Below are positions 3,624 through 54,800 of a DNA stretch of 64,000 nucleotides, piece after piece. The position numbers and the translations under genes were made by a program. The DNA is taken from assembly GCA_002269645.1 (NCBI GenBank), contig NIVC01000073.1, forward strand, positions 806,001-870,000. The letters are read 5' to 3'. The DNA is from Macrostomum lignano. Lineage: Eukaryota. Under the pieces are notes generated by a model. It had not been told where the DNA came from. It saw only the letters and a list, made by a program, of their open reading frames with translations, and searched no databases. Numbering within the stretch: the stretch's first letter is position 1; each line of letters opens with the position of its first letter.

Positions 3624-3659
<36 letters not shown>

Positions 3660-12930: not shown

Positions 12931-12950
12931 GTTGGAGCCCACTTTTCTGA

Positions 12951-29250: not shown

Positions 29251-32200
29251 TCTTAGGATGTTTTCTTTTTGCATTGCACTTCATCTGAGCAGTTTTTCTA
29301 TTGACTATGTGAAGGCTTTGTTTGGCCATCTTATTGATACTTGTAGAGAACAGAGATTCTATCTAGATGTCCCCCATCGGGGGGCGAAGATTGCTAGTCT
29401 AAATATACTAAATCTCTAATATTTGTATGCTTGTCCATAACGCTCTAGAGATTGCAATTCTTCACCGATTTTCATCGCGTGAAGAATTTCACCGATTTGT
29501 AATTAGCCCAGGATCGTATGGTTAAAATTTCTTTTATCTGCCTCAATGCTAAAGGGATTAAATATTCAAAAAACTGTTTTAAATAGGCTTTTTCATTGCA
29601 AATTTTATCAGCGAGAAACTTCACAGCCAATTTTAATTGATTGCGCCAGAGCAACTGCTAAGAAAACTCACTGGGCCCCACTTAAAGGGGGGAGAATAAA
29701 AAATTATTCTGGATGCTGGCAGCCAGCTCTAATTAGCTAGTCCGTCAATATCTATATTTATAATACTGAAAAGTTTAGATCAGTGCATTCTTTGCAACTG
29801 ACATGTCTAGTTACTCTAGTTCTGTGGTTGCTTCAGAAGTTGTCCAAAATTTTACTTCTGCAGTAAAGAAGTCAAATATTGTCTCAAATAAATAAATTGA
29901 ACTTGACTTGTCAGTACAATATTGTCGACTTTCAAAACCCTATACATTTGATTTAACATCAAGACTTAAATTCCATATCGTAGTCAGAGAATTTCGCATG
30001 TCTTGGAGCGACCAGCGGCGCTCTGCACCCTTGCCAGCTTCTCCCGCTTCTTCTCGCTCAGTGGAGGCAGGCTCGCAGGCCCGCCACCCCCAGCCTCTGC
30101 AGCTTCTGTTCCGCTCTTCGCCTGCCTACCAGCCGCCGCCTCAGCTCCGCTCTTCGCCTGCCCACCAGCCGCAGCCTCAGCTCCGATCTTCGCCTGCCCA
30201 CCAGCCGCAGCCTCAGCTCCGCTCTTCGCCTGCCCACCAGCCTCTGCCTCTGCCGCAGACGCCGGCACAATCTGCCGCAGTCTGGCGTGAAGCTCCTCGA
30301 ACTTTTCGCCGCGCCACGTCAGCTGGTCCTCCGCGTCCTTGTACATCTGCACGTAGATGAGCTGCGTGAGCGGCATCGACATCGGACCCTCGGGCGGCCA
30401 CGCCATCTTCTCCAGCATCACCGGAACGATCGGCTTGCGGATGGCGTCGGCGAGGCCCACCTCTCGCCTGCAGTTGGGCGAGGCGGCGTACTTGGGAGTG
30501 ACGAAGGCGACAACGACGCTGCAGCCGCGAACTCCGCGGTCGATCTTCTCGTAGAGCGAGTCGCCGCCTCCCATCTGGAAGATGTCCATCCAGCAGGTGA
30601 AGCCAAGACTGCACAGTCGAGAGTAGAGCGCCTTCACCTCTGACTGCTTGGACCACTGGTAGGACAGGAACACCTGCGGAGCGGCTGGCGGAGCGTCGCG
30701 GCTGTCGGCCGAGTCGGACTTGTCCTTGGCCTTGGCGTCCGTCTTGGAGGCCTCCTTCCGGTCGGGCAGCACGATGGTCTCGTCGGCGCTGGGCGGCTGC
30801 CACCAGTTCGCGTACTCTGTACTCACCGAGTCGTAGTCGGGCGCCACGGCCAACCGGATCTGAACCAGCAGCTCCATGAACTTGTCCGGCGGCCAGAACA
30901 CTCCACCGGAGCCGCGCCTTGCCGCTTCGATCGAACAAGCGGATGTACAGGTACTCGGTCAGCAGAGGTCCCATGGCTCCTTCCGGAGGCCAAGACACTC
31001 GCTCGAGCTGCACCGGGATCAGGTGCTTGTTCAGCGACACGGACAGGTTCAGCTGCAAATTGGAGATGAGCACGGGATGTATGTGTGAGCACACATGTAG
31101 CTACTCTACTGCAAGGATGAACTCAGGATGAACACGCTCACCTCTCGTCTGCAGTTGTCCGACTTGGAGTACTTGTCCGTCACGCACGCAATGACCACCT
31201 TGGCTGACCGAACTCCAGCATCGATAGCCGAGAACAGCTTGTCTCCGCCTCCCATCTGGCCAATGTCCATCCAGCAGCGATATCCGGCCTTCTCCAGGTG
31301 CTGCTTGAGCATCTTCACCTCGGCCTGGTGGCCCCACTGATAGCTGAGGAAGACGTTGCGAGGCGCCGTGAACTCGACCGGGTCGTCGGAGGCAGCGGAC
31401 TCTGAATGGAAGCGGCGAGCAGAGAACTCCGTTGTAGTATCAGTTATTCAATTAGCAACGATTGGTCTCTATTCAAGCTCAGATAGCTTGTACTCACCTG
31501 CGTTCAGAATGGACGCCTCGACAATGGCTGCTGCGTCAAGACGGTTCATCTCCTTGAGCTGCTGCAGCACAGCCTTGGACGCTTCCGCTGCTCGGTTGTT
31601 TGTGTAGAACTCGGCCAGCATACTCATACACGGGTCCGCAGTTGTGGCCCATGCTCGAATGTCGTCGGCCGAGAAGTTCAGTCTCTGAGCCAGCAGTCGC
31701 CAGTCAGTGTCGGACTCCGGGTTTATCAGTCGGGACACTTCGCGAGACCAGGCAGGAGCCGCGCTCAGAGTCTGTAGTGGAGTTGTAACTGCGAGTTGGC
31801 TTCTTTATCAACCATATGAGCCTACAGAAGGCTTCTTCTCAGCGACTCACCTTGAGATCGATCTCCTCGACCTTCTCGCCCAGCACGCCCACAGCGACAT
31901 TCAGCTCATCCACGCGGCCCTCCGTCGCGTCCACTCTGCCCCGAACTTGTCCGAGCTCGTCTCTGGTCTCGTCTACGCGACCCGACACCTCGTCGACTTT
32001 GTGTCCGGTGTCGCTCAAGTCTCGCTCGAGTCCGCCGATCTTGTCGCTCTGGTCGGTGATTTGGCCTTCCAGACCGACGAGCGAGCGGTTGGCGATCACA
32101 TCGAGTAGGTGGTTGCAGGCGTCGAGCAGAGCCGGGCTCGACTTCCAGTGCTTGATGTCGGACTCTCGCTCGGCCAGCAGCTGCGGACTGTCGACTCCGA

Positions 32201-35200
32201 CACTTCGCATCAGCGCGAGGCAGCTGGCCAGCTTTTCAGTCGCCGAATCCTTTTCAAGATAATGATTTACGACGTCAGTTATGGCTGTCATTAACTTGCA
32301 TGTACTGAATTTGCACTTTTCAATGGTATTCATCGCTGGAATGATGAGACTTATGTTGGACTTGGCCGCTTCTGCCAGTGTATCTAGGCAGTTTTCCATC
32401 ACAATACGCTGATCTTCACCAAGAAACCCAAGTCCTTCTAGCGCTGTAAATTGATGATCTCCTATCTTCTTGAGCATTTTGAGCATGTAATCGCGTAATT
32501 CATCGGGGCAGTGCTTGCTGTTGTGCTTGCAAGCGTGTGCGACCAAATATGTCAGTTGCGTATCGATGTTCAGAGTGCCATCCTGAAGGCTAATAAGCTG
32601 TGGAATTTGCTGCGCCAATGTGTCTGGCACCTCGTTGCGTGAACTGCTTTGCAGAGTGTCTGGAATGTACGGAGAGATGCTCTGAAATACTCATATTTTA
32701 CACAGTGTCTGTAAAGAGATGGTATTTAAATTTTACATATCAATCCAGGTGCCAAGCCGGTGTAAATTTCCGGTTGCTCTCTCTTCGTTCTTTTATACGT
32801 GTCCACTAGAAGAGGTAGATGCGGCAGAAAAGCAAACACGGTATCTGAGCTGTTGCCAAGGCAGTTGTTAAGCCCCAGCAAAACTCCGGTAGCCATGTCG
32901 CCTCGTGAGCTGCTGAAGAACCTGTCCACGGCTTTGGTGTACAGAGGAAATAGGTCCTTGTTGATTGTCACTAGCTACAGGTGTCAATTTTCAATTTAAT
33001 TTTTTAGTTTTACGAACGGAACTTTTGCAGTAAAATGCTTCGTAGCATGGGCTGATTGAAGTTATTTTTACCTTCGCAGCTTGTTGGAATCCAGCGGTTA
33101 GACTAACAACAACAGAGTGCAGTATTTGGCCTTCCAGAGTCAAGGTGTCACTGCCAGTTACGTCGGCTGTAGCCAATTCATTTTCAAGGCAGGTTTCCAG
33201 AAGTGGACGAAATTTCTCAAGTAGATTGCAAATGGTTTCTGGCGAGATCCTCCTGTTAATGAAAATTAGCGTCTTGATCAACTTACCTCTTGGAAGCTTC
33301 CAAGTAATTCTTTGTTGGGCTTTTAAGTCCAGCACTACAGCAGAGCATAGGTCGTGCATACTTCCTTTCGACTTGCGGTCAGACCTCATGGTAAATCTGT
33401 TTGCTACTTCCAGAGATGCCAATTTTTGCCTACTAGGCTGAAATAAAATTTAAAACATTAATGCGCCAATCTTACACCACATTGTCGATGAAATCGAGCG
33501 GTATTCTAAGAAACATGCTTCCATAGTTCAAAGTGTCGAGTGTAATAACTGGCTGTCGCACACACTGAACCATTGCGTCAAGGACAGCAGGTAGCTGGTC
33601 AGTCAGGTCCAGCCAGTTAAACATGTCGCACCGCCAGCCGCTCACGAGAATAGTTAAGCTTAGGCTGCGAACGGCTAGTAGCAGAATTTCGAGCAGCTTG
33701 AGCTGCATTGGTATCTGCCGGAGCATCGACTTTCCGGGCGATTGGCTAGAAAAAACACGAATCAATATGGAGGATTTTATTATAATTATCTTAGCTACCG
33801 ATCGAGCTAACAGATTTCAATACCTATAATTACCTATAACCTACAAATAATGAATCTAGTGGATATATTGGCTTCCTGAATATAAAGGCTTAGTGTGCTC
33901 AATAAGCGTCGTTATATAGCTATACACAGCCATCAAGTAGAGACCAATTTTTGAAAGGACACGGTCTGTTTGAGTATATCGGCTTCCTTTCGTACAGCAG
34001 TCGTGCGATTTGATCGCTGAGTTGATGTTGACTGCTTTTGATGCAACGCAAAATTATAATTTACGTTCTATAATTACGATCCTAACCTCTCAGCAAAAAC
34101 ATAAAAAAACAACTCAGCAAAGAAGAGAGTGAAGGTGACTCACAAGATGTTCATGATCAGCTTGTTGAAAAGGTCGCCCGCTCTGAAATCGAGGGCCTGA
34201 CCGGATGTGGCTCGTTTCGCCTCTTCGACTGACAACACTTCGGCCACGAACGCGTCAATGAAAAGCCATAACGCCGGTCGGAATGTCTGAAATGGTTGGG
34301 TTTGGCTTACCTTGAGTCCAATGCGTTAATATTTATTTAGAAATGCATGCGCGATAATACTACATGGATCAAGAGTGCAACGAAGTTGAAATCAAAGTAA
34401 CTGAAAATTTTAATGCAAGTAAAGCAAAACGCTGCCGGCTAGTCGCTTGAAAAGTTTAAAAGGAAAATCTTTACACACACTCAATCTAGCAATGAAAAAT
34501 TTTGACAAAGGTCTGCGTTTACCGGTTTGCAGACTTGCAGACTCCTCTTGCTGATGAACAAATCTATGAGAATTAAAAGCAATAGCATTACTTAAGAGGG
34601 CTCTATATATTAACTGCGTCATGGCACTTTGAGATGCTTTGCACTGAATTTTCTGTGGTTTGTGCTACTACTAGTTTTAGCTATTGACCTCATTGACACG
34701 GTCATCAAACTAAAAGACTTCGGGCGATTACAGACTTTTATAAAAGAGCCTTTACACTGTACTATATAGACCCTCATCTTTTTGCTTAACCTTGAAAATT
34801 GATTTTTGGATAAACGTTCGTCCGCTGATTCTCTCCATCACACGAGTGTTGCAAGCTTAGTAACAGGCTATGAGAACCGACGTAATACCAAATGTATATA
34901 AAAAACCCAGACATTAATTTTGTAAGTCTTAGTCAGCTAAAAGATTGAAGTCTGGTGTGCCAACAGTGACAACCATATGATTTCTATTTCTGACAAGTCC
35001 TGTCGGTACAGTACAGTACATTACACTTCAGTCTTAGCTACAGACTACAACGGAGCGCTAGTCTTATCAAGAGATCTTTAATACAAAAAACTTATTCAGT
35101 ACCTCAGCATTTCGCTGAATTAGTTTAATCCTGTCGCTGTCGATGTACATTTTTCTAAAGTACAAGTCGAACTCTGTGCTAGAGATGCGCATTAGGTTCA

Positions 35201-35365
35201 GGTAGGCGGGCATGCATTCGCTCAGCTCTTCAACGCTGGTCACAAGCTCGGGCATCAGGTTGCTGTACAACTGGCTGCGAATGTCCTTCAGTAGCTGCGG
35301 AACTGCAGCCAGCTTGCCGTTCTCATCCGGTGGAGGTGGCCTGATGAGCAAGAATCCTATGCTTC

Positions 35366-36420
35366 TGTTGTACCTGTGGTTGTCCTGCTGTACAGCGCAG
35401 TGACTTGGGCTCCGTCCTCTCACTTAGAAGCCTTCTTAACTTTAGTAGCGTAGGTATTGCTGCCACCAGTTCCTTCAGGTCTCGGCCTTCGGTGAGGTGA
35501 GCTTCCCGTCGGAACGAAATAATGAAGTCAACGAACACAGCACGACGTGCAGATTTGCAGCTCAACGTATAAGGCGTCTCGTCAGCAGCACCTGCCGGGC
35601 TTGGATGGTACAGGGAGGGCTGAGTTAGCCTCTCGTAGACTTGGATTGGTTTGGTCGGGTCTCAGTCGGAGCAATAGGAACAGAATCAATGTGCGCAAAG
35701 ACTCGGACACTCGGGACTTAGTCACACGCGGACGTAGAACTCGAGGTTGAACAGAAGGAAGACTCCTTGACGGAAACAAGGGGGAGAGGGCTCCTATTTA
35801 TAGCCGGGAAATTCCCACGCTCCAGACCTCGTGACTTGTTCTATTTTTAGAACTGACGTCACTCGAGAGTCTTGGGCAGGGTACAAGCGCGCGGAAGACC
35901 TCGTGACTTGTTCTATTTTTAGAACTGACGTCACTCGAGAGTCTTGGGCAGGGTACAAGCGCGCGGAAGACCTCGTGACTTGTTCTATTTTTAGAACTGA
36001 CGTCACTTGAGGTCCCCGGCCAGAGTACACGCGGCTGTGACTCAGTTGCTATTTTTAGCAACATGAGTCACTCCTCTCCTTAGAGAAGGGAAGGGTCCGA
36101 AAGCACGTGACTCACCCGGTAAACAGGGCCAACGAGTGCAGTAAACATGTTTACTGCACTTTAAGACTCAAAGAACGCAAGAACTGTCATGTGACTTGCT
36201 CACAAGACAGGGAAAACGGGACGGGAGCGAAACAGAGACAGCCCACAGTCGAGAGACTGAGGGCTGAGAACGGAAACGCAACAGGGCGGAAAGGACACGG
36301 GGGCAACAGGCAAGCGAAAGGAGGGCGGGAAGCTGACCAGCGGCAGACAGCAACCCAAAGGGAGGGCGAGGGAACGGCTGACAAGGGTGACGCCTAGCCA
36401 TAAACTAGCGGCTCACTACA
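35366..36420 (-). repeat. 3' LTR (1055 bp)
   Basis: Matches 44130-45184 at a constant offset of 8764. Confidence 0.97.
35795..36115 (-). promoter_or_regulatory. LTR U3 promoter: TATAAATA plus three 72-bp repeats each with TGACGTCA, and three TGA(C/G)TCA sites
   Basis: Repeat units start 35824, 35896, 35968; TATA on the minus strand at ~35795-35802; the same block is present at +8764 in the 5' LTR. Confidence 0.7.
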
Positions 36421-37137
36421 CTCTCCCCGTTCAAATAAAGAGGCGGAGTGAAGGCGGAGCGCGCCTTTATTTAAAAAGGTAAACTGCAGAAAATAAAATT
36501 TTGATTGGCAAAAAGGTGGTAACTTTGGCAGAATAGCAGAAGAGGGTGGGTCAGGCCCATGATTGCGACCCAAAACGCACGGCGGGGGCGCCTGCCCGCA
36601 TGAATTCAGCGCCTAAATACCGGGGTGCTTTAAATAATAGCAGGGCCCGTGGGGGAGAAAGGGGATACCTGAGCAGGTATGGGGACGTAAAAATAGAGGC
36701 CGCAATCGGACTTAAACGCGCGGCTGGGCGAGAGCCGTAAAACTGCCCCATACGGTATTAGTGGAACACACCAAATGCAGACGGGGGGCGCCAGCCCCAA
36801 GAAAGCAAGAAGCGCCTAAATACAAAGGGATGCGGGAGTTCTTGCAGAGCCCTGGGGAAGAAAAGCAAGGGACTGGCCAGAGGCCTTCAAAGGGTTATCA
36901 TCAGCTTGAGCACAAATGGCAAATGCTGCTCACAAAAGGAGAAAATTAAATGGCGCGATTGCGCAAAATTTGCACAGTTGCTATGGGCGCTAAGTCAGTG
37001 GCGCCGAAGGGTTTCGCACTAGGCTGCTTCCTAAAATCAATCAGTCCGCCCTGCCGCAGTTCATTATGATCTCGGGCACTGCCGGTGTGCGCCCAGCAAT
37101 TTGCCCAGCGATTAGCTGAGCTACAACGCGCGCTGTC

Positions 37138-40100
37138 TCAGGGTGCGGTGGTCGTCTGAGCGTGGGCTCGGCGAGTTGGTGAGTCCAAACCCGTCAGGTC
37201 GATGCAGACGGGAGCGGCAGTTCGCGGTCGGCGCTGCCCCTTGGCTTCGGGCTTGGTGTCGGTCGTGGCGGGCTTGGGTCGCTCCCGGCTGGTTTCTGCG
37301 GCCTCGCGTGCTTGGTCGGCCTCGACCTGGCGTCGGATTGTCGCGATTCCTTGGGCGACAGCTTCCGTGCTGGCTGTTGACGCAGCCGCCTGTCCTCCTG
37401 ATGAGGTTGGCGCTAGACGACGGACGACGGCCGGGTTCTCCGAGGGCGTCCCCTCGGCACCGGCGGTCCGGTTGTGCCCCGGTCGGCGTCGACGTCTGCG
37501 CCTCCTTGACGGGCGGTGGTTCTCCTCCGGCAGCGGCGTAGCTCCGCCGTCCTGGCGGAAGCCGAGCCGGAGCTGGGGAGGAATGCGATGAGCCTCTCGG
37601 TGCTCGCCAGATTCGAGCTGGCCGGCCGCTGCGCCGATCGGAGGCCCCGGTTCAACATAGTAACGGGGTCGATTGAGGCGAGCCTCAGTAGGCGGCGAGC
37701 GCTCAGTGCGCTTAGCAATACGGCGCGGTTGCATTTCTGCGCTGAAATTCGTTTTAGTTTGTGCGCGGATGCGGGCGGTGCGGCTAACGTAAGTTTTAGC
37801 CCTAGGATTAATAATCAGCCTCTCAGGCTGCCTACGGTTCCTAGCCGGCCTACCGGCATCTACAGTTCCTAATGACGCTTCCACCGGAGTGGTGCATAGC
37901 GACGGCCCAGGGGTCTGGACCACAGAAAAAGCAGCACTGGGGGCGGGAGCAGAAACGGGCGGAAAAGAAACAACAGGCGTAGACGCATCAAGAACAGGCT
38001 CATGCAAATGACATTCACCATACGGCACTGGCTCACGCCGAAGTGCACTTGCCTGGTTCGCTGGTGTCGTGACCGGTCCACCTCCTGGCTGCACCTCCGG
38101 GATCGCCAAAGGCCGGAAGTGCCATCGGAAGGCCGGCCTTGCGTCGTAGCCGTTATCATCATCGTCGTCGGGGTCGTCCTGGTCGTCCTCGGGAATCGGC
38201 GTCAGGGTCGCGGGTCCTGCGCCGTCGGGGACGTCGGGCGGTCGCCGACGCTTCTTCGGTTTGTCGACTTCAGGATCGGAAGTCCTCGTGTAATCGGCGT
38301 CAGGCACGAGTAGGAGGTTCCGGCGATGGACGATTAGTTCGTCTCGTCTGGCTCTCGGGTTGGGCAGTCTCCGTCGAATCTTGTAGACGACCTCGCCCTT
38401 GGGCTCGACGACTTCGTATAGGGCTTTGCGAGGTCGATGAAACTTCGCCGCCTCATCCGGTTCGAGTACCGGGTTGTTGAGGAAGACCAGATCGCCGGGT
38501 TGGAGCTTCTTGGCGACGGGCAGGTTCGAGTAGTGCTCGTCTCGCAGTTGCTGATGCAGATGCAGGCGCTCCTTGGCTAGCTCAGTCGCCTCGTCCAGGC
38601 GACGTTGGAAGTCCTTGACATAGTCGGGCAGGTTGGCATACTCGGGCAGCTTCTTTAGCGAGTTGTCGATCGGAAGTCGGAAGTCACGGCCGAACACCAG
38701 GTAGTGAGGCGTGAAACCTGTCACCGGGTGCACGCTGGAACGGAGAGCCATCAGACAAGCTGGGAGGAAGGTGTCCCAGTCGTTATGGTTGCGCTCGAGC
38801 AGACAGGTGAGGACACTCTTCAGCTGTTTGTTGAGGTTCTCGACTTGTCCGTTGGAAGCTGGATTGTACGGTGTTGTTGTCGTATGCCGAATGCCAAACA
38901 GGTCGCAGAACTTCTTGAAGGCGGAGCCGGTGAAGTTGGTGCCTTGATCGGTGTGAATCCAGCATGGTACACCGAACTCGGGGATGAAGCGCTCCTGCAG
39001 AAGCTTGATGACTGTTTTGGCTTTCTGGTTTCTCATCGGGTAGGCGAATGGATACTTCGACGTCGCATCGCACAAGGTCAGGATGTAGCGGTTGCCGCTC
39101 TTGCTCTTCTGCGCGATTGGTCCTACTACATCACAGTGGATTCTACCCAGAACTTCGCAAACTGGGAAGCTCTGGACCGGAACTCTCTCTCGCCGTCGCG
39201 ATTTACTTTCAAGGCAAGTGCGGCACTTACTGATGAAGGTCTTGGTAGCACGGGCTAATCCGGGTCTCCAGAACCGTTCTCGTAGCCGCAGTAACGTCTT
39301 CGTCTCGCCGAGGTGTCCACACAGTGGCGAACTGTGGAGCTCCTGGAGCACCTGGGCGTCAAGGGCCTCAGGCAGAACAACCTTTGGCGGCTGCTGGCCA
39401 TCGGACAGGTCAATCAGCAGCAGGCCGTTGTCCTCCTGCAGGTTCTCGTAGTATCCGAGCAGGTTCCGCTGCTCCTTCTTCAGTCGCAACCGGGCGTCGA
39501 ACTCAGGCTTCGGGGCTTCGTTCTCGACCAAGTTGAGCACGTAGCTGATGGCTCGATCAGCGCGCTGGGCTTCAACGAACTGTTGGCGAGTCATCGGCAG
39601 CTTCAGAAAATCAGTGAGCACAGCGCGGCATGGCTGAGGGGTCCGGATTCCCGCAGTCTCCGCTTTAATGGCTCCAGGTCGATCACACGGCACCGTCTTG
39701 TCGGCGTCAGGATTAGGTCGCTCCGAGGGACTTTGTCTCACAACGTCGGCGTACGTCCGTTGATCTCGATTCGAAGTTCTCTTCATCGCTCTCAAGACAG
39801 AAAAATCCGCAGATGGAGCAGCGCGCATGCCTCCACTGCATAGCACAGGCGACTCTTGGCTGTAGGGCGGGACGCAACACGTGAAGCACGCTTCGTCGCA
39901 GGCAGCCGTAGCCGTCGGCTCAGTCGTCGTCAAAATTGGGTGAGTCTTCTCCTGCACTGGGCGGTGTCGCAAAGGGGGACTCGACTTTCCGCACAGGCGA
40001 TGAGCAGCTGTCTGTCGGCCCGGGGGACAGAGCTTCGACCTTGCAGCTGGCGCGAGATTCTGGCCTCTGTCAACACGGCGAGAAATCCCAGCGAAAGGCT

Positions 40101-45184: not shown

Positions 45185-46704
45185 CTTCTTTGATCAGCTA
45201 AAGTCTCGTATATGGTTGGAATGCTCTGAAAGGCCAAGGCAGAGTCAGGTTGGGGGGGGGGGCTCGCGCAGTAAATAACAGAAGAGTAAATCGAAATTAA
45301 CTATGAATGTGTACTCGTATTTGTCAGTCATAAAAGTGATGACATTTACGATTAAAAATAACGATAGATGCTACTTCCTGGGGTCAGAGAAACTCAGAGG
45401 TAAGGCTTCTGTAATAGTTGCCTACGCATTTTTCGATTCCGTACCCTTCAAACGTCAGAGGTCAGCAAAATTTTCAAGACTAAACGCCCGTTCACGCAGT
45501 CATCAATTAATATTGATGTCACGCCAAGCCATTAAGTCCCGACGATGTTGTAAAAAACGATGGACAAACTGTACATGTGATCTAGCAAAACATAAACTTG
45601 AGTTAGATGGCAGTGTGAACGAACCCTATGTAGTATTTAGCTACCCTGTTTGTTAGCTACTTTTTACATTCACCTTTTAAGAAACAAACGCAATCAACAA
45701 AAATCTTTCATTCTCACCTTCAAGCTCAGTTTAGCTCTGACAGCAAAACTGTACAGTCGAACCAGTAGATATTTTCCTCGATCAATCAGCTTCTCATTGT
45801 CTGTATTGCTTGCCAAAATGCACAGGCAAATGCGATGTGAATCGTCAATTAGATAGGTAAAGTCTACATTTGTCACCTCTCTGCAACAGTCAATGAGGAT
45901 TAATGTTTTCTTCTTGAAGCCGTCACATTTAGCCGCAGTTAAGCATGCAGAGTTGAATTGAAATCCAAACCCTTTCTTACTGAACTGACGAGCCCAGCTT
46001 GAGCATAGCCATGCCCACAGCATCTGCCGTCTGCTTTGACAAGGCGCGACCTCTGTAACGGTTCGCCAGATTGTCAAGGACGCCTAACAACGATCGCATG
46101 AATGCTTGGTCACTGGCGTACATCTGGAATACGTAAATGTGCAAAGTAATTCGGGAAGATCACGACAGTGACCTTGTTTTAGGCTATATAACCTGTCATT
46201 GTTTAAAAGACTTAAATTTTGACTATTGACAAGGCAACCAGTGAAGCGAGCTGGGAATGGAAACACTTCTTAAAATGGCCGCAGACAAAGGCCGTTGCAA
46301 TGAGGCACACAGGAGAGACGAGGAAAAGATGAGGAAAGATTTTCACTGTGATTGTCGTTCGTTAAAAAGTCTCATTTAACCCGCAGAATGTTATACCATA
46401 TGAGGCAGAATATAGCAAAAGCAACAACTTCATTCACTTACGTGAACTATAGAGTTACAAAGAGGCCTGTGCGCAGCTTGACTCAATTTTCGATGCAACG
46501 CTGCCAGAACGCTCTCTCTGTACTGCTCAGTTTTGGCAGTAGATGAGTCGCATGTCTCCAATAGATTCAGATAGAAGCTCTTCACTGTATCGACCAGTTT
46601 TTCGTAATAGATTTTTTCACTGCAAAAAATGCATATTTGTAAGCGAGGCGTTTTATAGTCTCCAGGAAATCATAACATTACTATTGCAATGTGGTCACTT
46701 AGGG

Positions 46705-47390
46705 TTTTCAACAACAACAACAACAACAACAACAAAAATTTCACCCGCCGGCCACTCAGTGGCCAGAAAGGGGGAAAAGTCTTTGGGCCATAGCCCTCAA
46801 AAAGTCACCCCCCCCAGCTTGGTCCGGGGCGCCAGCATCAGTCAAAAGCTCGTCAGGATATCTCGTCGTTCGCCCTTGGCTGCTTGGCATCGCCTGCACG
46901 GTCCCTGCAGCAGCACTTCGTGTAGCGGCTCAGGGCAGCGGGCCTCTGACCGGATGAAGTGGCCAGCCAGTCAAAGTCGTCACCCGCGCAGCAGGTCAGA
47001 AGGCTGCATCAGGCACGCCCTTGCGTAGAGCGCGGCATTGGTCTCGCTGCCTGGACCGCTCCGTACTCCGAGCGCCGCACATAGCCGCATGCGCAGCGTC
47101 CAGCTGCCTCTCAAAGGCATCCGTCAGGGTCCAGGTCTCGACGTTGTACAACAGGACAGTCTCAACGACTGCCTGAAACAGCCGAGCCCTGAGCCCGTCA
47201 TTCAGGGCCTCAGAATGGAGCACGGAGCGCACAGAACGAAACGCGGCCCGCCCCAAGCCAGACCTCGTCGTCTCACAAGGTCGTCGTCAACGTCTGGCAC
47301 GAGGCCGCCGAGGTACAGGAACCGCTGGCAGTGGGTAAGCAGGATGGCCTCCCCAGCAGCGTCTCCAGGTTTTGTAACTGTGAAAGTATT
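46705..47390 (-). mobile_element. Degenerate 3' fragment of RTE-type LINE with (GTT)n tail, in intron of paralogue A
   Basis: LRARLFQAVVETVLLYNVETWTL resembles the post-RT region of the LINE at 63800-63950; multiple frameshifts. Confidence 0.8.
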
Positions 47391-48285
47391 ACTCTCACCA
47401 CTCACCAAAATACTCTCACCACTCACCAAAATACTCTCACCACTCACCAAAATACTCTCACCAACTCCGATTAACCAGTGGGTGACATGCAAGCACAGGG
47501 AGAGTTGGGCTAACGCCCAAAACTGCCCATAGTCCAGCGCTGCCGCTCCCTGTCCCTCCCCTGCTTGGCACTCGGCCGCAGTGATGTCAGGGCGGTAACC
47601 ATGGCTCTCTCAGGTCGTGGCTGCTTCACTAAGCATCGCTACCTCCAAGGATGAAACCCGCAGTGAGGAATGCCCATTCTGCCTCTCACTCTGCCTTGGT
47701 CCGAACCCGGATCTTTCTCTGACTTTTTTAGTCCCGAGAATTTACCAGCTCGTCGGGTACCTAAGGTACCGCTGCGGACACCGGCACTACCAGATCTCCG
47801 GGCGCGGCACCGCAGCACTAGCTGACCGTGGTCTTTAGGGTTAAAGGAACGGTCGGCAACGCCCGAAAACCGTGCAGCACTCGAAAACGTATTTAATCTG
47901 CTTATATACCGTAGAATCCATTGCATGAAATCGGTAAAGAAAATGTTACAGCAGTTCGATTAGCTACCTGAACTTAGACAGCAGAAATGTGACGGTCAGG
48001 TCGCGCAGTCGGGACACCGCGTAGGCTCTGTCCTTCTCGTCTTCTGCCTCAGCTGTATTCGGCTCTTCGATTCTAACGTCTTTAATGGCCAGCAGCAGCT
48101 TACGGGCGCAGTCTGGGTCCTGTCGGGTGAGTTAGAAATCAGCTTCAGCTTGAGGAGTAGTACGCACTGTATTTTACCCTCGCAATGTCAGTAAAAAGAT
48201 CAATTCTTACAGGTTTTATCACACGTGAAATAAAAGACACGTTTCTATAGTGTCAATGTTAACATCAACTTCTGCTAATTTAGCA

Positions 48286-48590
48286 GGTGTTGTAGCCTTG
48301 TGGTTAGAGCGTCGGACTCGTGACTTGAAGGTTGGGGGTTCGATTCCTGATCCAACTGGAACAATTTGTGTCCTTGAGCAAGACACTTATAACTCTGCAT
48401 TGCTTCAGTTCACCCAGCTGTAAAATGGGTGCCAGCATTAGCTGGGGTAATTGAGGGTGTGTGGTGACCCCCCCCCCCAGTCATTGGACTGAACAGCCGT
48501 ACGCAGCCTTCAGATGCGCCGCGCAATAGCTGCGACTGAGCTGTCGGTTGCACGTCTGGCCATTAGGCCAGGTGTAATCAATTACTATTA
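48286..48590 (+). mobile_element. tRNA-derived CORE-type SINE
   Basis: A/B boxes (gtagccttgtggttag, ggttcgattcc) followed by a MIR-core-like tgtgtccttgagcaagacactt...cacccagctgtaaaatggg; short (tta) tail. Confidence 0.75.
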
Positions 48591-50326
48591 TCAGTGTTGG
48601 GCACCAGTCCGTTAATAAGCGTTAATCCGTTAATAAGCGTTAATAAGTGTTAAGATTTTTTATTAACGTTAACGGACTGCCGTTAAGATTTTTTGCACTA
48701 ACGGATTAACAAATTTGCGTTAATAATTTTGTGAATTAACGACAAATTCATCGTTAACGTTAATGACAATGTCAATGACCAAAGACGCAAAGAAAGAACA
48801 AAAATATAAGTCTGACGAGAAGTTACAACATTGCGAATGTATTCGAATTTACTTAAATGCCTAATTAATCTCTTTGTTTACATGTATAACGATGATCATG
48901 CAAATGTAGCAACTTCTTACTAATGAACTTTAATAATGAATTAAAATTGTGAACTTTATTGCTTGCGCGTGAGCATCGATCGCTTTGATTCACTTAACTT
49001 CCTTCCTAATCTTTCGTAACTTTCTGCTGCGCCTGCTAATGCTACAGAAACAACCTTCCTATTCGTATTTTTATTATTAACTAATTAGATTTCAAGTTTC
49101 GAATAAACGATTTACTTCTTTTACCGATGCTTACTTGACGATGTTTAATTCGGATGTGATTGGGGAGAGGGAACATGATTCATGTAGGCTCCCGATTTCA
49201 TTCCAGCAGCATGAGCAGTTTCACCCACCTCAAACTTGTCCTCATCGTGTTTGCTCAGCACAGTCAGCTCGCCCATTAAGTCGACTAAGAATCCGCTTAG
49301 CCGCGGCCCGACCATTAAAGTGCAAAACGTGTCCCAGATGACGCCGCGCAGCTGCTTCTGCCAGCTTTTGTTCCTGTAGCTGTAGGTAAAGAAGTTAAAG
49401 CCAAGTATATGCAGCATATGGTTGCATCCCCGGAAACGGCCCAGGCAGCTGCACAACCAACTATTATTATTATTATTACACGAGCTATTTACAGAGCGTT
49501 CAAGTTTATATATATTAATTATACATTAATATAGCGTTCAAGCTGTTCCCCGTCCCTGCAAGTCCACTGAAAGAAATGTTGGGGGATGGAAGCGATATAA
49601 ACAGCGATAGAGAAAGAGGGGAAGGACAGGGGGACGGACAGGCAGCCACGAAACCCCACCCCACTGGCCAGCCAATCACGAGCCGCTGCCCAAAAGAAAG
49701 ACACAGGGCAGAGAAAAGAAATGGGGGTGTGGTACGCTTTAAACCCTCATACCCGGTCTGACCGGTAGCTTACATAACGTCGCGAATGTGGACAACAAAA
49801 CGGGTCACTACGTAGTGACCAGGAGAATGCCGATCTGGAGGCGACTTGTCTTGACTGGAGAATCGTTCTGTCATTGCCAGTAGAAGATTCTTGACATCGT
49901 ACTGCGACACCGACTCCGAAGGAAATCTCGTTTTGAGTTCGTCCATTATCTTATTGTCCACGTGCTCTTCCCTAGTTAGCAGGTCTAGCGATTTAAAATA
50001 GGAGTCCATTACGCTCGTAGCTAATTTGTTCTGGAACTTGTTCGAAATGCGTGGCTGTAAATTCACGTGTAATCTTTATATCTTAATACTAATCTTAATA
50101 CTCAACAGTTCTGCATGAAATCCTGTTCTGTGCGTTTTAAACGACCTTACAGAATTCGATGTAGCCAATTCAATTTAAATGTAGCTAGCAGCTAGTGAAA
50201 ATGAATCAAACGAATCTCCCAAGATAAAACAGTGTTATACGCTGTAGTTTATTTGTCAATTTAAATATTGTATTTACGCAGAAGATAGATACGCAATAAG
50301 ATAGTATGAAATAACTTTCAATTCCA

Positions 50327-51880: not shown

Positions 51881-54800
51881 TCACAGAACGTTGCACGTCT
51901 TCGAGCGACCAGCGGCGCTCTGCACCCTCGCCAGCTTCTCCCGCTTCTTCTCGCTCAGCGGAGGGAGGCTCGAAGGCCCGCCAACCTCTGCAGCCTCCGC
52001 AGCCTCAGCTCCGCTTTTCGTCTGCCCACCAGACGCCGCTTCAGCTCTGCTATTCGCCTGCCCACCAGCCGCAGCCTCAGCTCCGCTCTTCACCTGCCCA
52101 CCAGCCGCAGCCTCAGCTCCGCTCTTCGTCTGCCCACCAGACGCCGCTTCAGCTCTGCTATTCGCCTGCCCACCAGCCGCAGCCTCAGCTCCGCTCTTCG
52201 CCTGCCCACCAGCCGCCGCCTCTGCCGCAGGCGCCGGCACAATCTGCCGCAGTCTGGCGTGAAGCTCCTCGAACTTTTCGCCGCGCCACGTCAGCTGGTC
52301 CTCCGCGTCCTTGTACATCTGCACGTAGATGAGCTGCGTGAGCGGCATCGACATCGGACCCTCGGGCGGCCACGCCATCTTTTCCAGCATCACCGGAACG
52401 ATCGGCTTGCGGATGGCGTCGGCGAGGCTTACCTCTCGCCTGCAGTTGGGCGAGGCGGCGTACTTGGGAGTGACGAAGGCGACAACGACGCTGCAGCCGC
52501 GAACTCCGCGGTCGATCTTCTCGTAGAGCGAGTCGCCGCCTCCCATCTGGAAGATGTCCATCCAGCAGGTGAAGCCGAGACTGCACAGTCGAGAGTAGAG
52601 CGCCTTCACCTCTGACTGCTTGGACCACTGGTAGGACAGGAACACCTGCGGAGCGGCTGGCGGAGCGTCGCGGCTGTCGGCCGAGTCGAACTTGTCCTTG
52701 GCCTTGGCGTCCGTCTTGGAGGCCTCCTTCCGGTCGGGCAGCACGATGGTCTCGTCGGCGCTGGGCGGCTGCCACCAGTTCGCGTACTCTGCACTCACCG
52801 AGTCGTAGTCGGGCGCCACGGCCAACCGGATCTGAACCAGCAGCTCCATGAACTTGTCCGGCGGCCAGAACACTCCGCCAGAGCCGGACGCCTTGCCGCT
52901 TCGATCGAACAAGCGGATGTACAGGTACTCGGTCAGCAGAGGTCCCATGGCTCCTTCCGGAGGCCAGGACACTCGCTCGAGCTGCACCGGGATCAGGTGC
53001 TTGTTCAGCGACACGGACAGGTTCAGCTGCAAATTGGAGATGAGCACGGCATGTATGTGTGAGCATGCATGTACTCTACAGCAAAGATGAGCTCAAACAG
53101 GCTCACCTCTCGTCTGCAGTTGTCCGACTTGGAGTACTTGTCTGTCACACACGCAATGACCACCTTGGCTGACCGAATTCCAGCATCGATGGCCGAGAAG
53201 AGCTTGTCTCCGCCTCCCATCTGGCCAATGTCCATCCAGCAGCGATACCCGGCCTTCTCCAGGTGCTGCTTGAGCATCTTCACCTCGGCCTGGTGGCCCC
53301 ACTGATAGCTGAGGAAGACGTTGCGAGGCGCCGTGAACTCGACCGGGTCGTCGGAGGCAGCGGACTCTGAATGGAAGCGGCGAGCAGAGAACTCCGTTGT
53401 AGTATCAGTTATTCAATTAGCAACGAGTGGTCTCTATTCAAGCTCAGATAGCTTGTACTCACCTGCGTTCAGAATGGACGCCTCGACAATGGCTGCTGCG
53501 TCAAGACGGTTCATCTCCTTGAGCTGCTGCAGCACAGCCTTGGACGCTTCCGCTGCTCGGTTGTTTGTGTAGAACTCGGCCAGCATACTCATACACGGGT
53601 CCGCAGTTGTGGCCCATGCTCGAATGTCGTCGGCCGAGAAGTTCAGTCTCTGAGCCAGCAGTCGCCAGTCAGTGTCGGACTCCGGGTTTATCAGTCGGGA
53701 CACTTCGCGAGACCACGCAGGAGCCGCGCTCAGAGTCTGGAGTGGAGTTGTAACTGCGAGTTGGCTTCTGAGCCTATGATATGAGCCTACAGAAGGCTTC
53801 TTCTCAGCGACTCACCTTGAGATCGATCTCCTCGACCTTCTCGCCCAGCACGCCCACAGCGACATTCAGCTCATCCACGCGGCCCTCCGTCGCGTCCACT
53901 CTGCCCCGAACTTGTCCGAGCTCGTCTCTGGTCTCGTCTACTCGACCCGACACCTCGTCGACTTTGTGTCCGGTGTCGCTCAAGTCTCGCTCGAGTCCGC
54001 CGATCTTGTCGCTCTGGTCGGTGATTTGGCCTTCCAGACCGACGAGCGAGCGGTTTGCGATCACATCGAGTAGGTGGTTGCAGGCGTCGAGCAGAGCCGG
54101 GCTCGACTTCCAGTGCTTGATGTCGGACTCTCGCTCGGCCAGCAGCTGCGGACTGTCGACTCCGACACGTCGCATCAGCGCGAGACAGCTGGTGAGCTTG
54201 TTAGCCTCTGAGTCTTGAGCAAGGTGATGATTCACAATCTCACACATGGACGTCATTAGTTTTGGTGCTTCAAACTTTCCTTTATCAATGGTAGTAATTA
54301 TGAGTGCTACAAGATCGATGTTAGATATCGCTGTCGTCACCAGCTGGTCTAAGGCTCCTGACATCACCTGCGGTTGATTTTCTGCTAGGGAAGCGAGGCC
54401 ACCCAGCGCAATAGCGGCGTATGGACCTTGCAGAAAGCTTAGCAGATAATCTCGCATCTTTTCGGCAGATTTGGCGCTGTTAAGTTTGCAGACAGTCCCA
54501 ATGAACTGAACCATCTGTACTTGCACGGTGTCTTCTCCCTCGCTTAGGCTGATTAGCTGGTCGACTCGGCTGGCTAGTTGATCCGGAATCTCCGTTTTCG
54601 CTGACAGTTGCAGGCATTCTGCTCGCAAAAGTTTTTTTAAGGAATGACTATTATCGTTTAGATTTAGATTTAGTTTTTCGAGTCAAAAAATGTTTGTGCA
54701 TTTACTCACGCAACAGTCCCACAAACAATGCTCCAAACATCTGAGAGCCCGCAGTCTTTTGCTCCTGTAGAAATTCCAACAGAAGCGGAAAATGCGGCAG

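What the first reader, a model, noticed from the sequence alone, without database searches (positions are those of the whole stretch)
29984..54200. Mosaic divergence: effector halves near-identical (introns included), sensor halves highly diverged
From about 32235 to the stop in A and about 54200 to the stop in B the DNA is nearly identical. The 96-nt Death/TIR1 intron differs at one base. Upstream exons align only weakly at protein level (e.g. LYSNLMPELVTSVEELSECMPAYLNLM vs LFQKLLPSAATTVEDMASCMPLYVKLL) yet keep intron phases. The switch falls inside an exon (at CLALMR.VGVDSP), and the 3' UTRs are unrelated. Inference: gene conversion homogenises the signalling module while the sensor diversifies, as in NLR clusters.
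Basis: partly seen in the sequence, partly recalled or inferred. Interest (0 to 1): 0.72.

Follow-up and report, generated by a model that had tools for sequence, protein, structure and literature searches.

The report
Gene conversion between flatworm TIR genes
Two neighbouring flatworm genes of an uncharacterised immune-type family keep their signalling halves about 98% identical by repeatedly copying DNA between each other, while their front halves have diverged beyond recognition at the DNA level; the same pattern occurs in this family in an annelid and a scallop, and one of the two copies here has just been broken by a mobile element.

Summary
The window is Macrostomum lignano (flatworm). 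It holds two minus-strand, 15-exon paralogues with an N-terminal helical region, a coiled coil, a Death domain and two TIR_2 domains.

- **The mosaic.** Upstream of A 32220 / B 54185 the genes are 35% identical in protein, and silent sites are saturated. From 32219/54184 to the C-terminal 36-bp repeat, about 2.0 kb including three introns is 98.1% identical (pS 0.035). The last ~100 coding bases are 89% identical. Nothing aligns past the stop codon.
- **Repeated conversion.** A second copy of the locus (Mlig_3_7 contig) has the same switch point. In the tract, 22 informative sites group A with B within each locus, and one groups A with A. So this is repeated interlocus gene conversion, not a single event or a misassembly.
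- **Other phyla.** The same coiled coil-to-TIR2 block is homogenised at silent sites in tandem paralogues of an annelid and a scallop.
Gene A is broken here by a young 9.8-kb LTR retrotransposon in exon 7 and a 2-bp frameshift in exon 15. "Sensor diversification" is not shown: recent dN/dS is 0.13 to 0.29.
- **Closest precedent.** TLR1/TLR6 is closer than NLR clusters.

The parts
51881..60784 (-). Gene B: intact, 15 exons, 1530 aa. Architecture: helical N-half, coiled coil, Death, TIR, TIR, 36-bp-repeat tail, C-terminal CNVL. Exons: 60784-60549, 59982-59841, 59745-59615, 58700-58526, 58282-58152, 57729-57579, 56825-56529, 56373-56216, 55988-55713, 55268-55091, 54944-54710, 54618-53816, 53736-53463, 53366-53107, 53026-51881.
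   Evidence: The exon map was carried over from the exact spliced match of PAA93690.1 (P0075) on L001. All sites are GT/AG and the frame is open. Pfam gives TIR_2 twice (3e-47) and Death (1e-6).
29984..50009 (-). Gene A: paralogue with the same 15 exons and the same intron phases, disrupted in this window. Exons: 50009-49774, 49373-49229, 48119-47968, 46619-46442, 46123-45981, 45880-45718, exon 7 in two pieces (45225-45185 and 35361-35103), 34286-34144, 33745-33476, 33252-33072, 32974-32737, 32659-31851, 31771-31498, 31401-31142, 31052-29984.
   Evidence: Homology-guided search for GT/AG sites with B's phases. Every exon and splice site is conserved in the second locus L001. The frame is open throughout apart from the two defects listed below.
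30193..32219 (-). Conversion tract in A: the 3' 369 nt of exon 12, intron 12, exon 13 (Death), intron 13, exon 14 and intron 14 (TIR1), and exon 15 up to and into the repeat array (end of TIR1, linker, TIR2).
   Evidence: 98.1% identical to B 52165-54184. Silent-site difference (pS) is 0.035 against 0.75 upstream. Site patterns are 22 to 1 for within-locus grouping.
52165..54184 (-). Conversion tract in B, the counterpart of A 30193-32219.
32204..32220 (-). 5' switch point in A (B 54169-54185), inside exon 12 at CLALMR|VGVDSP, about 49 codons upstream of the coiled coil. The second locus has the same position (L001 about 17169 and 28592).
   Evidence: The last paralogue-specific site is 32220. 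From 32204 onward no site has that pattern. In the 81 nt upstream, 25 of 25 informative sites are paralogue-specific. The L001 self-comparison starts at the same base.
30099..30250 (-). 36-bp tandem repeat in A (AEAAAGGQAKSG units, 4.2 copies). The 3' edge of the young tract falls here.
   Evidence: TRF. There is a 72-bp length difference from B.
51997..52222 (-). The same 36-bp repeat in B: 6.3 copies here and about 10 in the L001 copy.
   Evidence: TRF. P0075 sequence.
29984..30092 (-). Last coding bases of A plus the stop codon. They end in the CaaX-like CEIL. This stretch is 88.7% identical to B 51884-51992 (pS 0.23), intermediate between the tract and the N-half. Either an older conversion reached it, or it lies outside the recent tracts.
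   Evidence: In the tail (A 30090-29987) the second locus's B copy agrees with window B at 12 of the 14 sites where A differs.
35366..45184 (-). LTR retrotransposon (Ty3/gypsy type) inserted in coding exon 7 of A, 41 nt after the acceptor. LTRs are 35366-36420 and 44130-45184. The 4-bp target-site duplication GAAG lies at 35362-35365 and 45185-45188.
   Evidence: The LTRs differ at 1 of 1055 bases. The ends are TG...CA and flanked by the duplication. The pol ORF 42606-37141 has RVT_1, RNase H and integrase domains. The site is empty in L001.
30914..30915 (-). 2-bp deletion in exon 15 of A, between these two bases. Window B and the L001 B copy both have TC here. It shifts the frame at the end of TIR1, so TIR2 is out of frame.
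   Evidence: No reads were available, so an assembly error cannot be excluded.

Best explanation
**Claim.** A and B are lineage-specific tandem paralogues of a conserved bilaterian gene family. The architecture is an alpha-solenoid N-half, a coiled coil, a Death domain, two SARM1/bacterial-type TIR domains, a low-complexity tail and a CaaX end. Repeated non-reciprocal interlocus gene conversion keeps a discrete block nearly identical between the two genes, silent sites and introns included. The block runs from about 49 codons before the coiled coil to the end of TIR2. The N-halves, the extreme C-tail and the flanks are not exchanged.

**Shown.**
- The tract and its edges.
- Saturation of silent sites outside the tract.
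- Within-locus clustering of A and B in two copies of the locus, so conversion acted after those copies split, and probably in both.
- Recurrence of the same block in an annelid and a scallop.

**Inferred.**
- The 5' edge is now self-maintaining, because strand exchange needs near-identity and there is none upstream.
- The edge sits at a domain junction because tracts reaching into the N-half were selected against.
- Homogeneity is favoured because the paralogues use the same partners, or co-assemble through the coiled coil, Death and TIR parts, while their solenoid halves respond to different inputs.
- The GC3 rise in the tract reflects GC-biased conversion.

**Order of events in this window.**
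1. The two loci split (silent divergence about 0.05-0.08).
2. The last conversion happened (about 0.036).
3. A was knocked out very recently by an LTR retrotransposon (LTR divergence 0.001) and a 2-bp deletion.
For: **Tract and contrast.**. NG86 for wA-wB:

| Region | Protein identity | pS | Codons |
|---|---|---|---|
| N-half | 35% | 0.75 | 844 |
| Tract | 98.9% | 0.035 | 561 |
| Tail | 91% | 0.23 | 33 |

Four-fold sites: 86/127 against 12/288, p = 1e-43.

**Second locus.** L001 (NIVC01000023.1) has the same two genes and the same switch.
- Site patterns in 1036 nt of tract: 22 within-locus, 1 orthologous, 0 of the third kind (p = 5e-10).
- The 81 nt upstream give 25 orthologous and 0 within-locus.
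- Pairwise differences: wA-wB 1.74%, lA-lB 1.81%, cross-locus 3.5-4.2%.

**Introns and flanks.** Introns inside the tract are homogenised; none of the upstream introns aligns. The 3' flanks are unrelated, which excludes simple unequal crossing-over.

**Composition.** GC3 is 0.56-0.59 in the N-half and 0.78 in the C-half. Intron GC is 0.30-0.45 (one A intron, holding the TE-like insert, 0.56) against 0.44-0.51.

**Replication in other phyla.**
- Dimorphilus, four-gene tandem array: the last 1.73-1.80 kb is 98.7-98.8% identical in DNA and nothing is alignable in the 5' 3.4 kb. pS is 0.73 / 0.025 / 0.24 for N-half / module / tail.
- Its unlinked paralogue P0026 has a similarly diverged N-half but only 85% module identity.
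- Argopecten, head-to-head pair: pS 0.70 / 0.066 / 0.45. Only introns 16-21 are alignable.
- Between-species pairs with 30-40% N-half identity have 66-86% module identity.

**Lineage-specific duplication.** The A and B N-halves are each other's closest relatives: 39% against at most 18% to any other species.

**Architecture.**
Against: - Only half of the tract is available for the second locus's A copy, because L001 ends at A 31184. The four-sequence test covers 1036 nt.
- Whether the window and L001 are subgenome copies, haplotypes or strains is unknown. M. lignano has three subgenomes (PMC10733133).
- With no outgroup, conversion after the split is proven for at least one locus. For the other it is only inferred, from lA-lB being half the cross-locus distance.
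- Introns 12 and 14 are only about 90% identical, because of clustered changes private to window B. The tract is patchy, not one clean event.
- The GC3 rise is absent in Dimorphilus (0.27-0.30 against 0.30). GC12 also rises in M. lignano. So biased conversion is not established.
- A selective reason for the homogeneity is untested.
- Gene A is dead in this copy, so any present benefit cannot apply to this haplotype.
Confidence: 0.85

Rival explanations
1. A single recent replacement: one partial duplication or one conversion copied the 3' 2 kb of one gene over the other. There is no ongoing process.
For: One event would give the sharp 5' edge and the roughly 98% identity seen in the window alone.
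Against: - The second locus has the same edge, yet its A and B group with each other and not with their window counterparts (22:1 sites; 1.8% against 3.5-4.2%). This needs homogenisation both before and after the loci split.
- The tail at 89% (pS 0.23) is a third age class.
- Patches private to one copy sit inside the tract.
- The same block is homogenised independently in an annelid and a scallop.
Confidence: 0.07
2. Unequal crossing-over between tandem paralogues produced chimeric genes. The shared 3' half is then simply inherited from one parent.
For: Both genes lie head to tail 22 kb apart, and the breakpoint is inside an exon.
Against: - A crossover would also carry the donor's 3' UTR and downstream flank. 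Similarity stops at the stop codon, and the coding tail is already diverged.
- It does not predict within-locus clustering in two loci.
- The Argopecten pair is head to head, where a crossover would invert the DNA rather than homogenise it.
Confidence: 0.04
3. Assembly or polishing artefact: a collapsed or cross-polished repeat makes two different 3' halves look alike.
For: M. lignano is a neopolyploid that is hard to assemble (PMC10733133). The two frameshifts (2 bp in window A, 1 bp in a run of A in L001 A') could be assembly errors.
Against: - The two tracts differ at 38 substitutions and several indels, so they were assembled separately.
- A second, 3-10% divergent copy of the locus (L001, Mlig_3_7; the window's own source assembly is unknown) shows the same structure.
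- Assemblies of two other phyla show the same mosaic.
- A 2-kb block is well within long-read length.
Confidence: 0.02
4. Strong purifying selection on the signalling domains alone, with no DNA exchange.
For: The module is the slow-evolving part of the family: about 50% identity between phyla against about 15% for the N-half.
Against: - Silent sites (pS 0.035 against 0.75) and three introns are homogenised.
- Paralogues are closer than orthologous counterparts.
- An unlinked Dimorphilus paralogue reaches only 85% module identity.
Confidence: 0.01

Closest known systems
Mammalian TLR1/TLR6 and avian TLR1A/TLR1B and TLR2A/TLR2B regional gene conversion (Kruithof et al. 2007, PMC2077338; Huang et al. 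2011, PMC3125219; Velova et al. 2018, PMC6107061)
   Same: - Linked paralogues of a TIR-domain protein.
- A discrete 3' block containing the TIR domain is more alike between paralogues than between orthologues, because of independent conversions in each lineage.
- The block has almost the same extent in every lineage, and the recognition part stays diverged.
- The proposed reason is shared partners.
   Different: - A different, cytosolic family with no LRR ectodomain or transmembrane segment detected by Pfam.
- The block covers a coiled coil, a Death domain and two TIRs.
- It recurs across three phyla rather than within one vertebrate class.
- N-halves are far more diverged (35% protein identity, silent sites saturated).
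- One partner here is a fresh pseudogene.
SARM1 / C. elegans TIR-1 (ARM, SAM, SAM, TIR NAD+ hydrolase)
   Same: - An N-terminal ARM/HEAT-type solenoid, then an oligomerisation element, then TIR of the SARM1/bacterial type with the conserved Glu.
- Full-length human SARM1 and TIR-1 are among the top Foldseek hits for the model of an amphioxus family member.
- SARM1, AbTIR and PdTIR are the nearest solved TIR sequences.
   Different: - No SAM domains. The family has a coiled coil plus a Death domain instead.
- Two TIRs, and a CaaX end.
- TM-scores are low (0.14-0.21), and sequence similarity is confined to the TIR.
- NADase activity and autoinhibition are untested.
Plant and animal NLR clusters
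   Same: Clustered immune-type paralogues with a variable recognition part and a conserved signalling part. Sequence exchange occurs among cluster members.
   Different: - No NB-ARC or NACHT domain here.
- In NLR clusters exchange is mostly discussed as a source of diversity in the recognition repeats (my own knowledge), not as strict homogenisation of a signalling block with a fixed edge.
[quoted passage not shown] 2017, as cited in PMC6321704)
   Same: A TIR-containing family that is widespread in invertebrates and absent from vertebrates. An adaptor or regulator role in immunity has been hypothesised.
   Different: I could not read the original classification, so which ecTIR-DC family this is remains unassigned. 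The papers I could search report no concerted evolution for it.
CYP21A2/CYP21A1P-type conversion between a gene and its neighbouring pseudogene
   Same: In this window a broken copy (A) sits next to an intact copy (B), with a 2-kb tract of about 98% identity that contains A's frameshift. Conversion could therefore carry the defect into B.
   Different: No such transfer is observed here. A's defects are very recent and may be confined to this haplotype or subgenome.

Membership tests
Interlocus (ectopic) gene conversion / concerted evolution | Within the tract, paralogues of one genome copy are more alike than orthologous counterparts. | tested here: met
   22 within-locus against 1 orthologous informative sites. 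Differences are 1.7-1.8% within a locus and 3.5-4.2% across loci.
Interlocus (ectopic) gene conversion / concerted evolution | Silent sites and introns are homogenised, not only amino acids. | tested here: met
   pS 0.035 against 0.75. Four-fold sites 12/288 against 86/127. Intron 13 has 1 difference in 96.
Interlocus (ectopic) gene conversion / concerted evolution | A discrete tract whose both ends lie inside the homologous region, with flanks not exchanged (this distinguishes it from a crossover). | tested here: met
   The 5' edge lies between 32220 and 32204. The 3' edge is in the 36-bp repeat. The tail is 89% identical and the 3' UTR is unrelated.
Interlocus (ectopic) gene conversion / concerted evolution | Both copies are physically separate in the genome (read-level support). 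| not testable with these tools
   No reads were available. Indirect support: 38 substitutions between the copies, and a second, divergent copy of the locus with the same structure.
Solenoid, coiled coil, Death, TIR, TIR family (uncharacterised; probably an ecTIR-DC family) | A Death domain followed by two TIR_2 domains. | tested here: met
   Pfam: TIR_2 in 2 stretches (3e-47) and Death (1e-6), above the gathering scores.
Solenoid, coiled coil, Death, TIR, TIR family (uncharacterised; probably an ecTIR-DC family) | Full-length homology to the family in other phyla. | tested here: met
   74 hits, with E down to 1e-187, in molluscs, annelids, a nemertean, rotifers, amphioxus, hemichordates and echinoderms.
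Solenoid, coiled coil, Death, TIR, TIR family (uncharacterised; probably an ecTIR-DC family) | An alpha-solenoid N-terminal half. | tested here: inconclusive
   Modelled only for the amphioxus member P0042 (residues 1-500 all-helical, pLDDT above 90). The window N-halves have no Pfam hit.
Solenoid, coiled coil, Death, TIR, TIR family (uncharacterised; probably an ecTIR-DC family) | A C-terminal Cys four residues from the end (CaaX-like). | tested here: met
   The Cys is invariant or nearly so in the alignments. B ends in CNVL and A in CEIL.
SARM1-type TIR NAD+ hydrolase | A catalytic Glu in the TIR. | tested here: met
   A Glu (invariant to nearly invariant) sits in the NC(N/R)RE motif of both TIRs. 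It aligns with the KELD Glu of PdTIR 3h16. That this Glu is the catalytic one is my own knowledge.
SARM1-type TIR NAD+ hydrolase | SAM-domain octamer and ARM autoinhibition. | tested here: not met
   No SAM domain in Pfam; a coiled coil and a Death domain are present instead. This is therefore not a SARM1 orthologue. Autoinhibition cannot be tested here.
SARM1-type TIR NAD+ hydrolase | NAD+ cleavage activity. | not testable with these tools
   Needs an enzyme assay.
NLR (NB-ARC/NACHT receptor) | A central NB-ARC or NACHT nucleotide-binding domain. | tested here: not met
   No such Pfam hit in B, the A N-half, or homologues, searched up to E = 0.1.
LTR retrotransposon, Ty3/gypsy type (the insert in A) | Two direct LTRs ending TG...CA, a target-site duplication, and pol in the order RT, RNase H, integrase. 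| tested here: met
   The 1055-bp LTRs have 1 mismatch. GAAG is duplicated. RVT_1 lies at residues 282-442, RNase H at 509-642 and integrase at 1079-1249.

The most novel reading that the evidence does not exclude
Across bilaterian invertebrates this family may work as a 'many sensors, one effector' array. Linked paralogues carry fast-diverging alpha-solenoid input halves. A common output module (coiled coil, Death, tandem TIR, possibly an NAD+-cleaving and prenyl-anchored assembly) is kept interchangeable by selection-maintained gene conversion. The block's edges sit at or near the same domain junctions in flatworm, annelid and mollusc. That would be a gene-conversion route to what protocadherin and UGT1A loci achieve with variable and constant exons. 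The paralogues would co-assemble through the shared module.
Probability: 0.3. Interest if true: 0.72.

Novelty: new member of a known kind. Interest (0 to 1): 0.5.

Why it matters
Regional gene conversion that fixes the signalling end of TIR receptors while the recognition end diverges is known from vertebrate TLR1-family genes. Here the same behaviour appears in an unrelated, uncharacterised family with a SARM1-like build, and it recurs independently in three phyla with nearly the same block edges.

- **Functional hint.** It marks the coiled coil-Death-TIR-TIR block as one functional unit. It predicts that paralogues share partners or co-assemble.
- **Phylogenetic warning.** Trees of this family built on the conserved C-half will show false species-specific expansions. 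Only the N-half records orthology.
- **Experimental system.** M. lignano is a laboratory model with RNAi and transgenesis. It has a natural contrast between an intact and a broken copy.

If the finding goes no further than this window, it is still a clean, well-dated example of concerted evolution next to a very young retrotransposon knockout.

Tried and rejected
**Steps that led nowhere**
- The search for homologous proteins with a concatenated A N-half (874 aa) returned nothing, although L001 carries an annotated 834-aa product there. So I could not fetch the rest of the second locus's A copy. The four-sequence test stops at A 31184.
I modelled the amphioxus member P0042 instead.
- P0049 (amphioxus) is not on record, so there is no DNA-level test in a chordate.
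- A first family alignment timed out and was rerun with a faster MAFFT mode.
- My first exon finder failed on one Argopecten exon and was replaced by a backtracking version.

**Readings considered and rejected**
- *Shared constant exons spliced to alternative 5' exon sets (protocadherin-like).* Each gene has its own physical copy of the block with its own differences and its own tail.
- *A begins just downstream of the LTR element.* Exons 1-6 and the first 41 nt of exon 7 lie beyond the element at 50009-45185.
- *The N-half is under diversifying selection.* Whole-region dN/dS is 0.13 and 0.29; site-level tests were not possible with two sequences.
- *GC-biased conversion as a general signature.* It is not seen in Dimorphilus.

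Full report
**What is in the window.** The window is Macrostomum lignano, a free-living flatworm. The conceptual product of gene B is 97-99% identical to UniProt A0A1I8I651 and GenBank PAA93690.1.

Both genes of the finding lie on the minus strand. I mapped PAA93690.1 exactly onto its own contig (L001), which gave 15 exons, and carried that model to the window.
- **Gene B** (60784-51881) is intact. It has 15 GT/AG exons and encodes 1530 aa.
- **Gene A** was rebuilt by homology. It has the same 15 exons with the same intron phases and similar lengths. It runs from 50009 to 29984, not from about 35400.

Pfam finds a Death domain and two TIR_2 domains in the C-half, a coiled coil in front of them, and nothing in the N-half.

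**Checking the observation.**
- blastn and a global alignment show a sharp step. 100-nt windows have 46-64% identity upstream and 99-100% downstream.
- The core tract, A 32219-30193 = B 54184-52165, has 38 mismatches in 2018 aligned bases plus 11 gap columns.
- Identity inside the tract is uneven: exons 97.7-99.6%, intron 13 (the 96-nt Death/TIR1 intron) one difference, intron 12 89.9% and intron 14 91.2%. The lower intron values come from clustered changes private to window B.
- The tract runs into a 36-bp coding tandem repeat with 4.2 copies in A and 6.3 in B.
- Beyond the repeat, the last 106 coding bases are only 88.7% identical. After the stop codon there is no similarity.

Codon-based measures agree:

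| Region | Protein identity | pS | Codons |
|---|---|---|---|
| N-half | 35% | 0.75 (saturated) | 844 |
| Tract | 98.9% | 0.035 | 561 |
| Tail | 91% | 0.23 | 33 |

Four-fold sites differ at 86/127 against 12/288 (Fisher p = 1e-43).
- The switch is about 15 nt further 3' in the gene (lower coordinates) than stated.
- The identity is patchy.
- Near-identity stops at the repeat, not at the stop codon.

- A 9.8-kb Ty3/gypsy-type LTR retrotransposon (35366-45184) sits inside coding exon 7 of A, 41 nt after the acceptor. It has TG...CA ends and a GAAG target-site duplication.
- Its 1055-bp LTRs differ at one base. Its pol ORF has reverse transcriptase, RNase H and integrase domains.
- Exon 15 of A lacks 2 bp that both B copies have. 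This shifts the frame at the end of TIR1.
- Apart from these two defects every A exon is open and every splice site is intact. Between the two loci A has evolved with dN/dS 0.29.
- So A was a working gene until very recently. LTR divergence (0.001) is about 35 times smaller than the silent divergence of the tract (0.036). The insertion therefore post-dates the last conversion.

**The second locus and the test for conversion.** Contig NIVC01000023.1 of assembly Mlig_3_7 (L001) carries a 90-97% identical counterpart of the region.
- It has both genes, an empty retrotransposon site, and no copy of window 46991-47613.
- M. lignano is a neopolyploid with three subgenomes (PMC10733133), so such counterparts are expected. 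I cannot say whether this one is a subgenome copy or a haplotype.
- Its two genes switch from unalignable to 97.65% identical at exactly the same base as in the window.

Four-sequence alignment:
- **81 nt upstream of the switch:** 25 sites group A with A and B with B. None groups by locus.
- **1036 nt of tract that L001 covers:** 22 sites plus two indels group window A with window B and L001 A with L001 B. One site groups by orthology and none shows the third pattern (p = 5e-10).
- **Pairwise differences:** 1.74% and 1.81% within loci, 3.5-4.2% between loci.

This is the signature of concerted evolution.
- The block was already shared before the loci split, since the edge is the same in both.
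- It has been homogenised again since the split, certainly in one locus.
- Because the within-locus distance in each is about half the cross-locus distance, it was probably homogenised in both.
- The 89% tail is a third, older layer.

Unequal crossing-over is excluded because the 3' flanks are unrelated. Misassembly is very unlikely: the copies differ at dozens of sites and the structure is reproduced in a second, divergent copy of the locus (L001). Selection alone cannot homogenise silent sites and introns.

**Composition.** In both genes GC3 rises from 0.56-0.59 before the switch to 0.78 after it. Intron GC rises from 0.30-0.45 (one A intron, the one holding the TE-like insert, 0.56) to 0.44-0.51. 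That fits GC-biased conversion acting for a long time. But GC at codon positions 1 and 2 also rises, and the annelid shows no such shift. I treat it as suggestive only.

**The same mosaic in other phyla.** While reading homologues I noticed that three Dimorphilus gyrociliatus proteins had identical C-halves and very different N-halves.
- **Dimorphilus (annelid).**
  - The locus is a head-to-tail array of four genes.
  - The last 1.73-1.80 kb of three of them is 98.7-98.8% identical in DNA. The fourth is 100% identical to two of those three (95% to the third) over the 141 bp available.
  - The 5' 3.4 kb is not alignable at all.
  - pS is 0.73 in the N-half, 0.025 in the module and 0.24 in the tail.
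  - The switch lies inside the last exon at ...LD|LEGR..., at the start of the coiled coil.
  - An unlinked paralogue (P0026) has an equally diverged N-half but only 85% module identity. That is what the module looks like without exchange.
- **Argopecten irradians (scallop).**
  - Two head-to-head neighbours give pS 0.70 / 0.066 / 0.45.
  - Only the six introns inside the module are alignable.
- **Protein level, other lineages.**
  - Change-point fits put the start of the high-identity block between 49 residues before and 71 residues after the start of the coiled coil in flatworm, annelid, bivalves and abalones.
  - Amphioxus pairs fall outside that range (about 125 residues before) and are only weakly mosaic.
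  - The block ends within about 8 residues of the end of TIR2 in most of the pairs; in two it ends 21 and 26 residues earlier, and one amphioxus pair gave no sensible end.
  - For Mytilus, Haliotis, Pecten and Branchiostoma the evidence is protein-level only and could partly reflect constraint.
- **Baseline.** Between-species pairs with 30-40% N-half identity have 66-86% module identity.
- **Age of the duplication.** The A and B N-halves are each other's nearest relatives: 39% against at most 18% to any other species. The duplication is therefore specific to the flatworm lineage.

**What the proteins probably are.**
- The TIRs are of the SARM1/bacterial type. The nearest solved sequences are PdTIR, AbTIR, Cat1 and SARM1. 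The Death domain is nearest to that of p75NTR.
- Both TIRs keep a Glu that is invariant to nearly invariant and aligns with the Glu of the bacterial TIR. That this is the catalytic Glu is my own knowledge.
- The family ends in a CaaX-like motif whose Cys is invariant or nearly so (CNVL in B, CEIL in A), which suggests prenylation. This is an inference.
- An AlphaFold model of the amphioxus member P0042 gives:
  - a confident all-helical solenoid (residues 1-500, pLDDT above 90);
  - one long helix, then a six-helix Death fold;
  - two TIR folds and a disordered tail.
- Its best Foldseek matches are full-length human SARM1 and C. elegans TIR-1, followed by CAND1, importins and beta-catenin. TM-scores are low, as expected for a multi-domain model.
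- So 'input half plus output half' is a reasonable reading by analogy with SARM1. This is not a SARM1 orthologue (no SAM domains) and not an NLR (no NB-ARC or NACHT). No input is known.

**Mechanism, and what is shown against what is inferred.**

*Shown:*
- Repeated non-reciprocal exchange is confined to the block.
- The block's edges and relative ages are known.
- It recurs in three phyla.

*Inferred:*
- The 5' edge is now self-maintaining, because recombination needs near-identical sequence and none exists upstream.
- Its position at a domain junction, repeated across phyla, reflects selection against tracts that overwrite the N-half.
- Homogeneity is favoured because the paralogues share partners or co-assemble through the coiled coil, Death and TIR parts. 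Kruithof et al. made the same argument for TLR1/TLR6 (PMC2077338).

Recent evolution of the N-halves is purifying (dN/dS 0.13 and 0.29). 'Diversifying sensor' is therefore not supported as stated.

One practical consequence in this haplotype: a dead A lies next to a live B, with 2 kb of about 98% identity that includes A's frameshift. Conversion could damage B.

**Comparison with what is known, and verdict.**
- The phenomenon is a known kind. The best precedent is TLR1/TLR6 in nine mammals, and the avian TLR1 and TLR2 duplicates (PMC2077338, PMC3125219, PMC6107061).
- New here are the family, the extent of the block (coiled coil, Death and two TIRs) and its independent recurrence in Platyhelminthes, Annelida and Mollusca.
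- The family is uncharacterised and probably belongs to the invertebrate 'ecTIR-DC' group mentioned in PMC6321704.
- I found no paper describing this, but the library is incomplete.
- I rate it a new member of a known kind, of moderate interest.

Noticed in passing
window 35366-45184 (minus strand): A young, apparently complete Ty3/gypsy-type LTR retrotransposon. It has a gag-like ORF (44187-43171, 339 aa, no Pfam hit) and a 1822-aa pol ORF (42606-37141). The LTRs differ at 1 of 1055 bases. It is absent from the counterpart locus L001, so it is a recent, possibly still active, element.
   Followed up: partly
window 46991-47613 (intron 3 of gene A): A roughly 620-bp stretch absent from L001. 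It carries an ORF fragment with a reverse-transcriptase-tail-like sequence but no Pfam hit. It is probably a second, older transposon fragment that is polymorphic between the two loci.
   Followed up: partly
window 51884-51895 and 29987-29998; alignments A1 and A2: The family ends in a CaaX-like box whose Cys is invariant or nearly so, preceded by basic or Ser residues (KKSxxCxxL; here CNVL and CEIL). This suggests C-terminal prenylation and membrane anchoring of an otherwise cytosolic-looking protein.
   Followed up: partly
window B exon 14 (53366-53107) and exon 15 (53026-51881); alignment A1 columns 1428 and 1628: Both TIR domains keep a Glu, invariant to nearly invariant across the family, in S(P/A)NC(N/R)RE. 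It aligns with the Glu of bacterial and SARM1-type TIR NAD+ hydrolases, so the module may be enzymatic rather than a pure adaptor.
   Followed up: partly
window 31805-31813 (B 53770-53778) and 31092-31135 (B 53066-53100): Two clusters of substitutions and small indels inside introns 12 and 14 are private to window B; window A and the L001 copies that cover each cluster agree with each other. They look like multi-base events or tiny imports from a third copy. They are unexplained.
   Followed up: no
L001 about 28476 (equivalent to window A 32352): The Mlig_3_7 copy of gene A has a 1-bp deletion in a run of A in exon 12. Its annotated product stops there (834 aa). This may be an assembly error or an independent inactivation of A.
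   Followed up: partly
window 29984-32219 against 32220-50009, and the same split in B: GC3 jumps from 0.56-0.59 to 0.78 at the switch point in both genes, and intron GC also rises. Nothing comparable is seen in the Dimorphilus array.
   Followed up: yes
window 3637-6823; 12084-12933; 18810-19950; 20588-21068: Four tandem-repeat arrays downstream of gene A: seven copies of a unit of about 447 bp (99% alike), and arrays with periods of about 35.5, 28 and 23 bp. None is related to the two genes.
   Followed up: no
window 23179-23409 and 50329-50594; 28896-28977 and 56953-57110 (inverted): Short dispersed repeats (80-93% identical) lie near both genes. They are probably fragments of mobile elements and not part of the duplication.
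   Followed up: no
L002 (Dimorphilus CAJFCJ010000012.1:333791-359065): A four-gene head-to-tail array of this family in about 23 kb. The whole homogenised block lies in one large last exon. A third gene product of 1513 aa was not among the search hits.
   Followed up: partly
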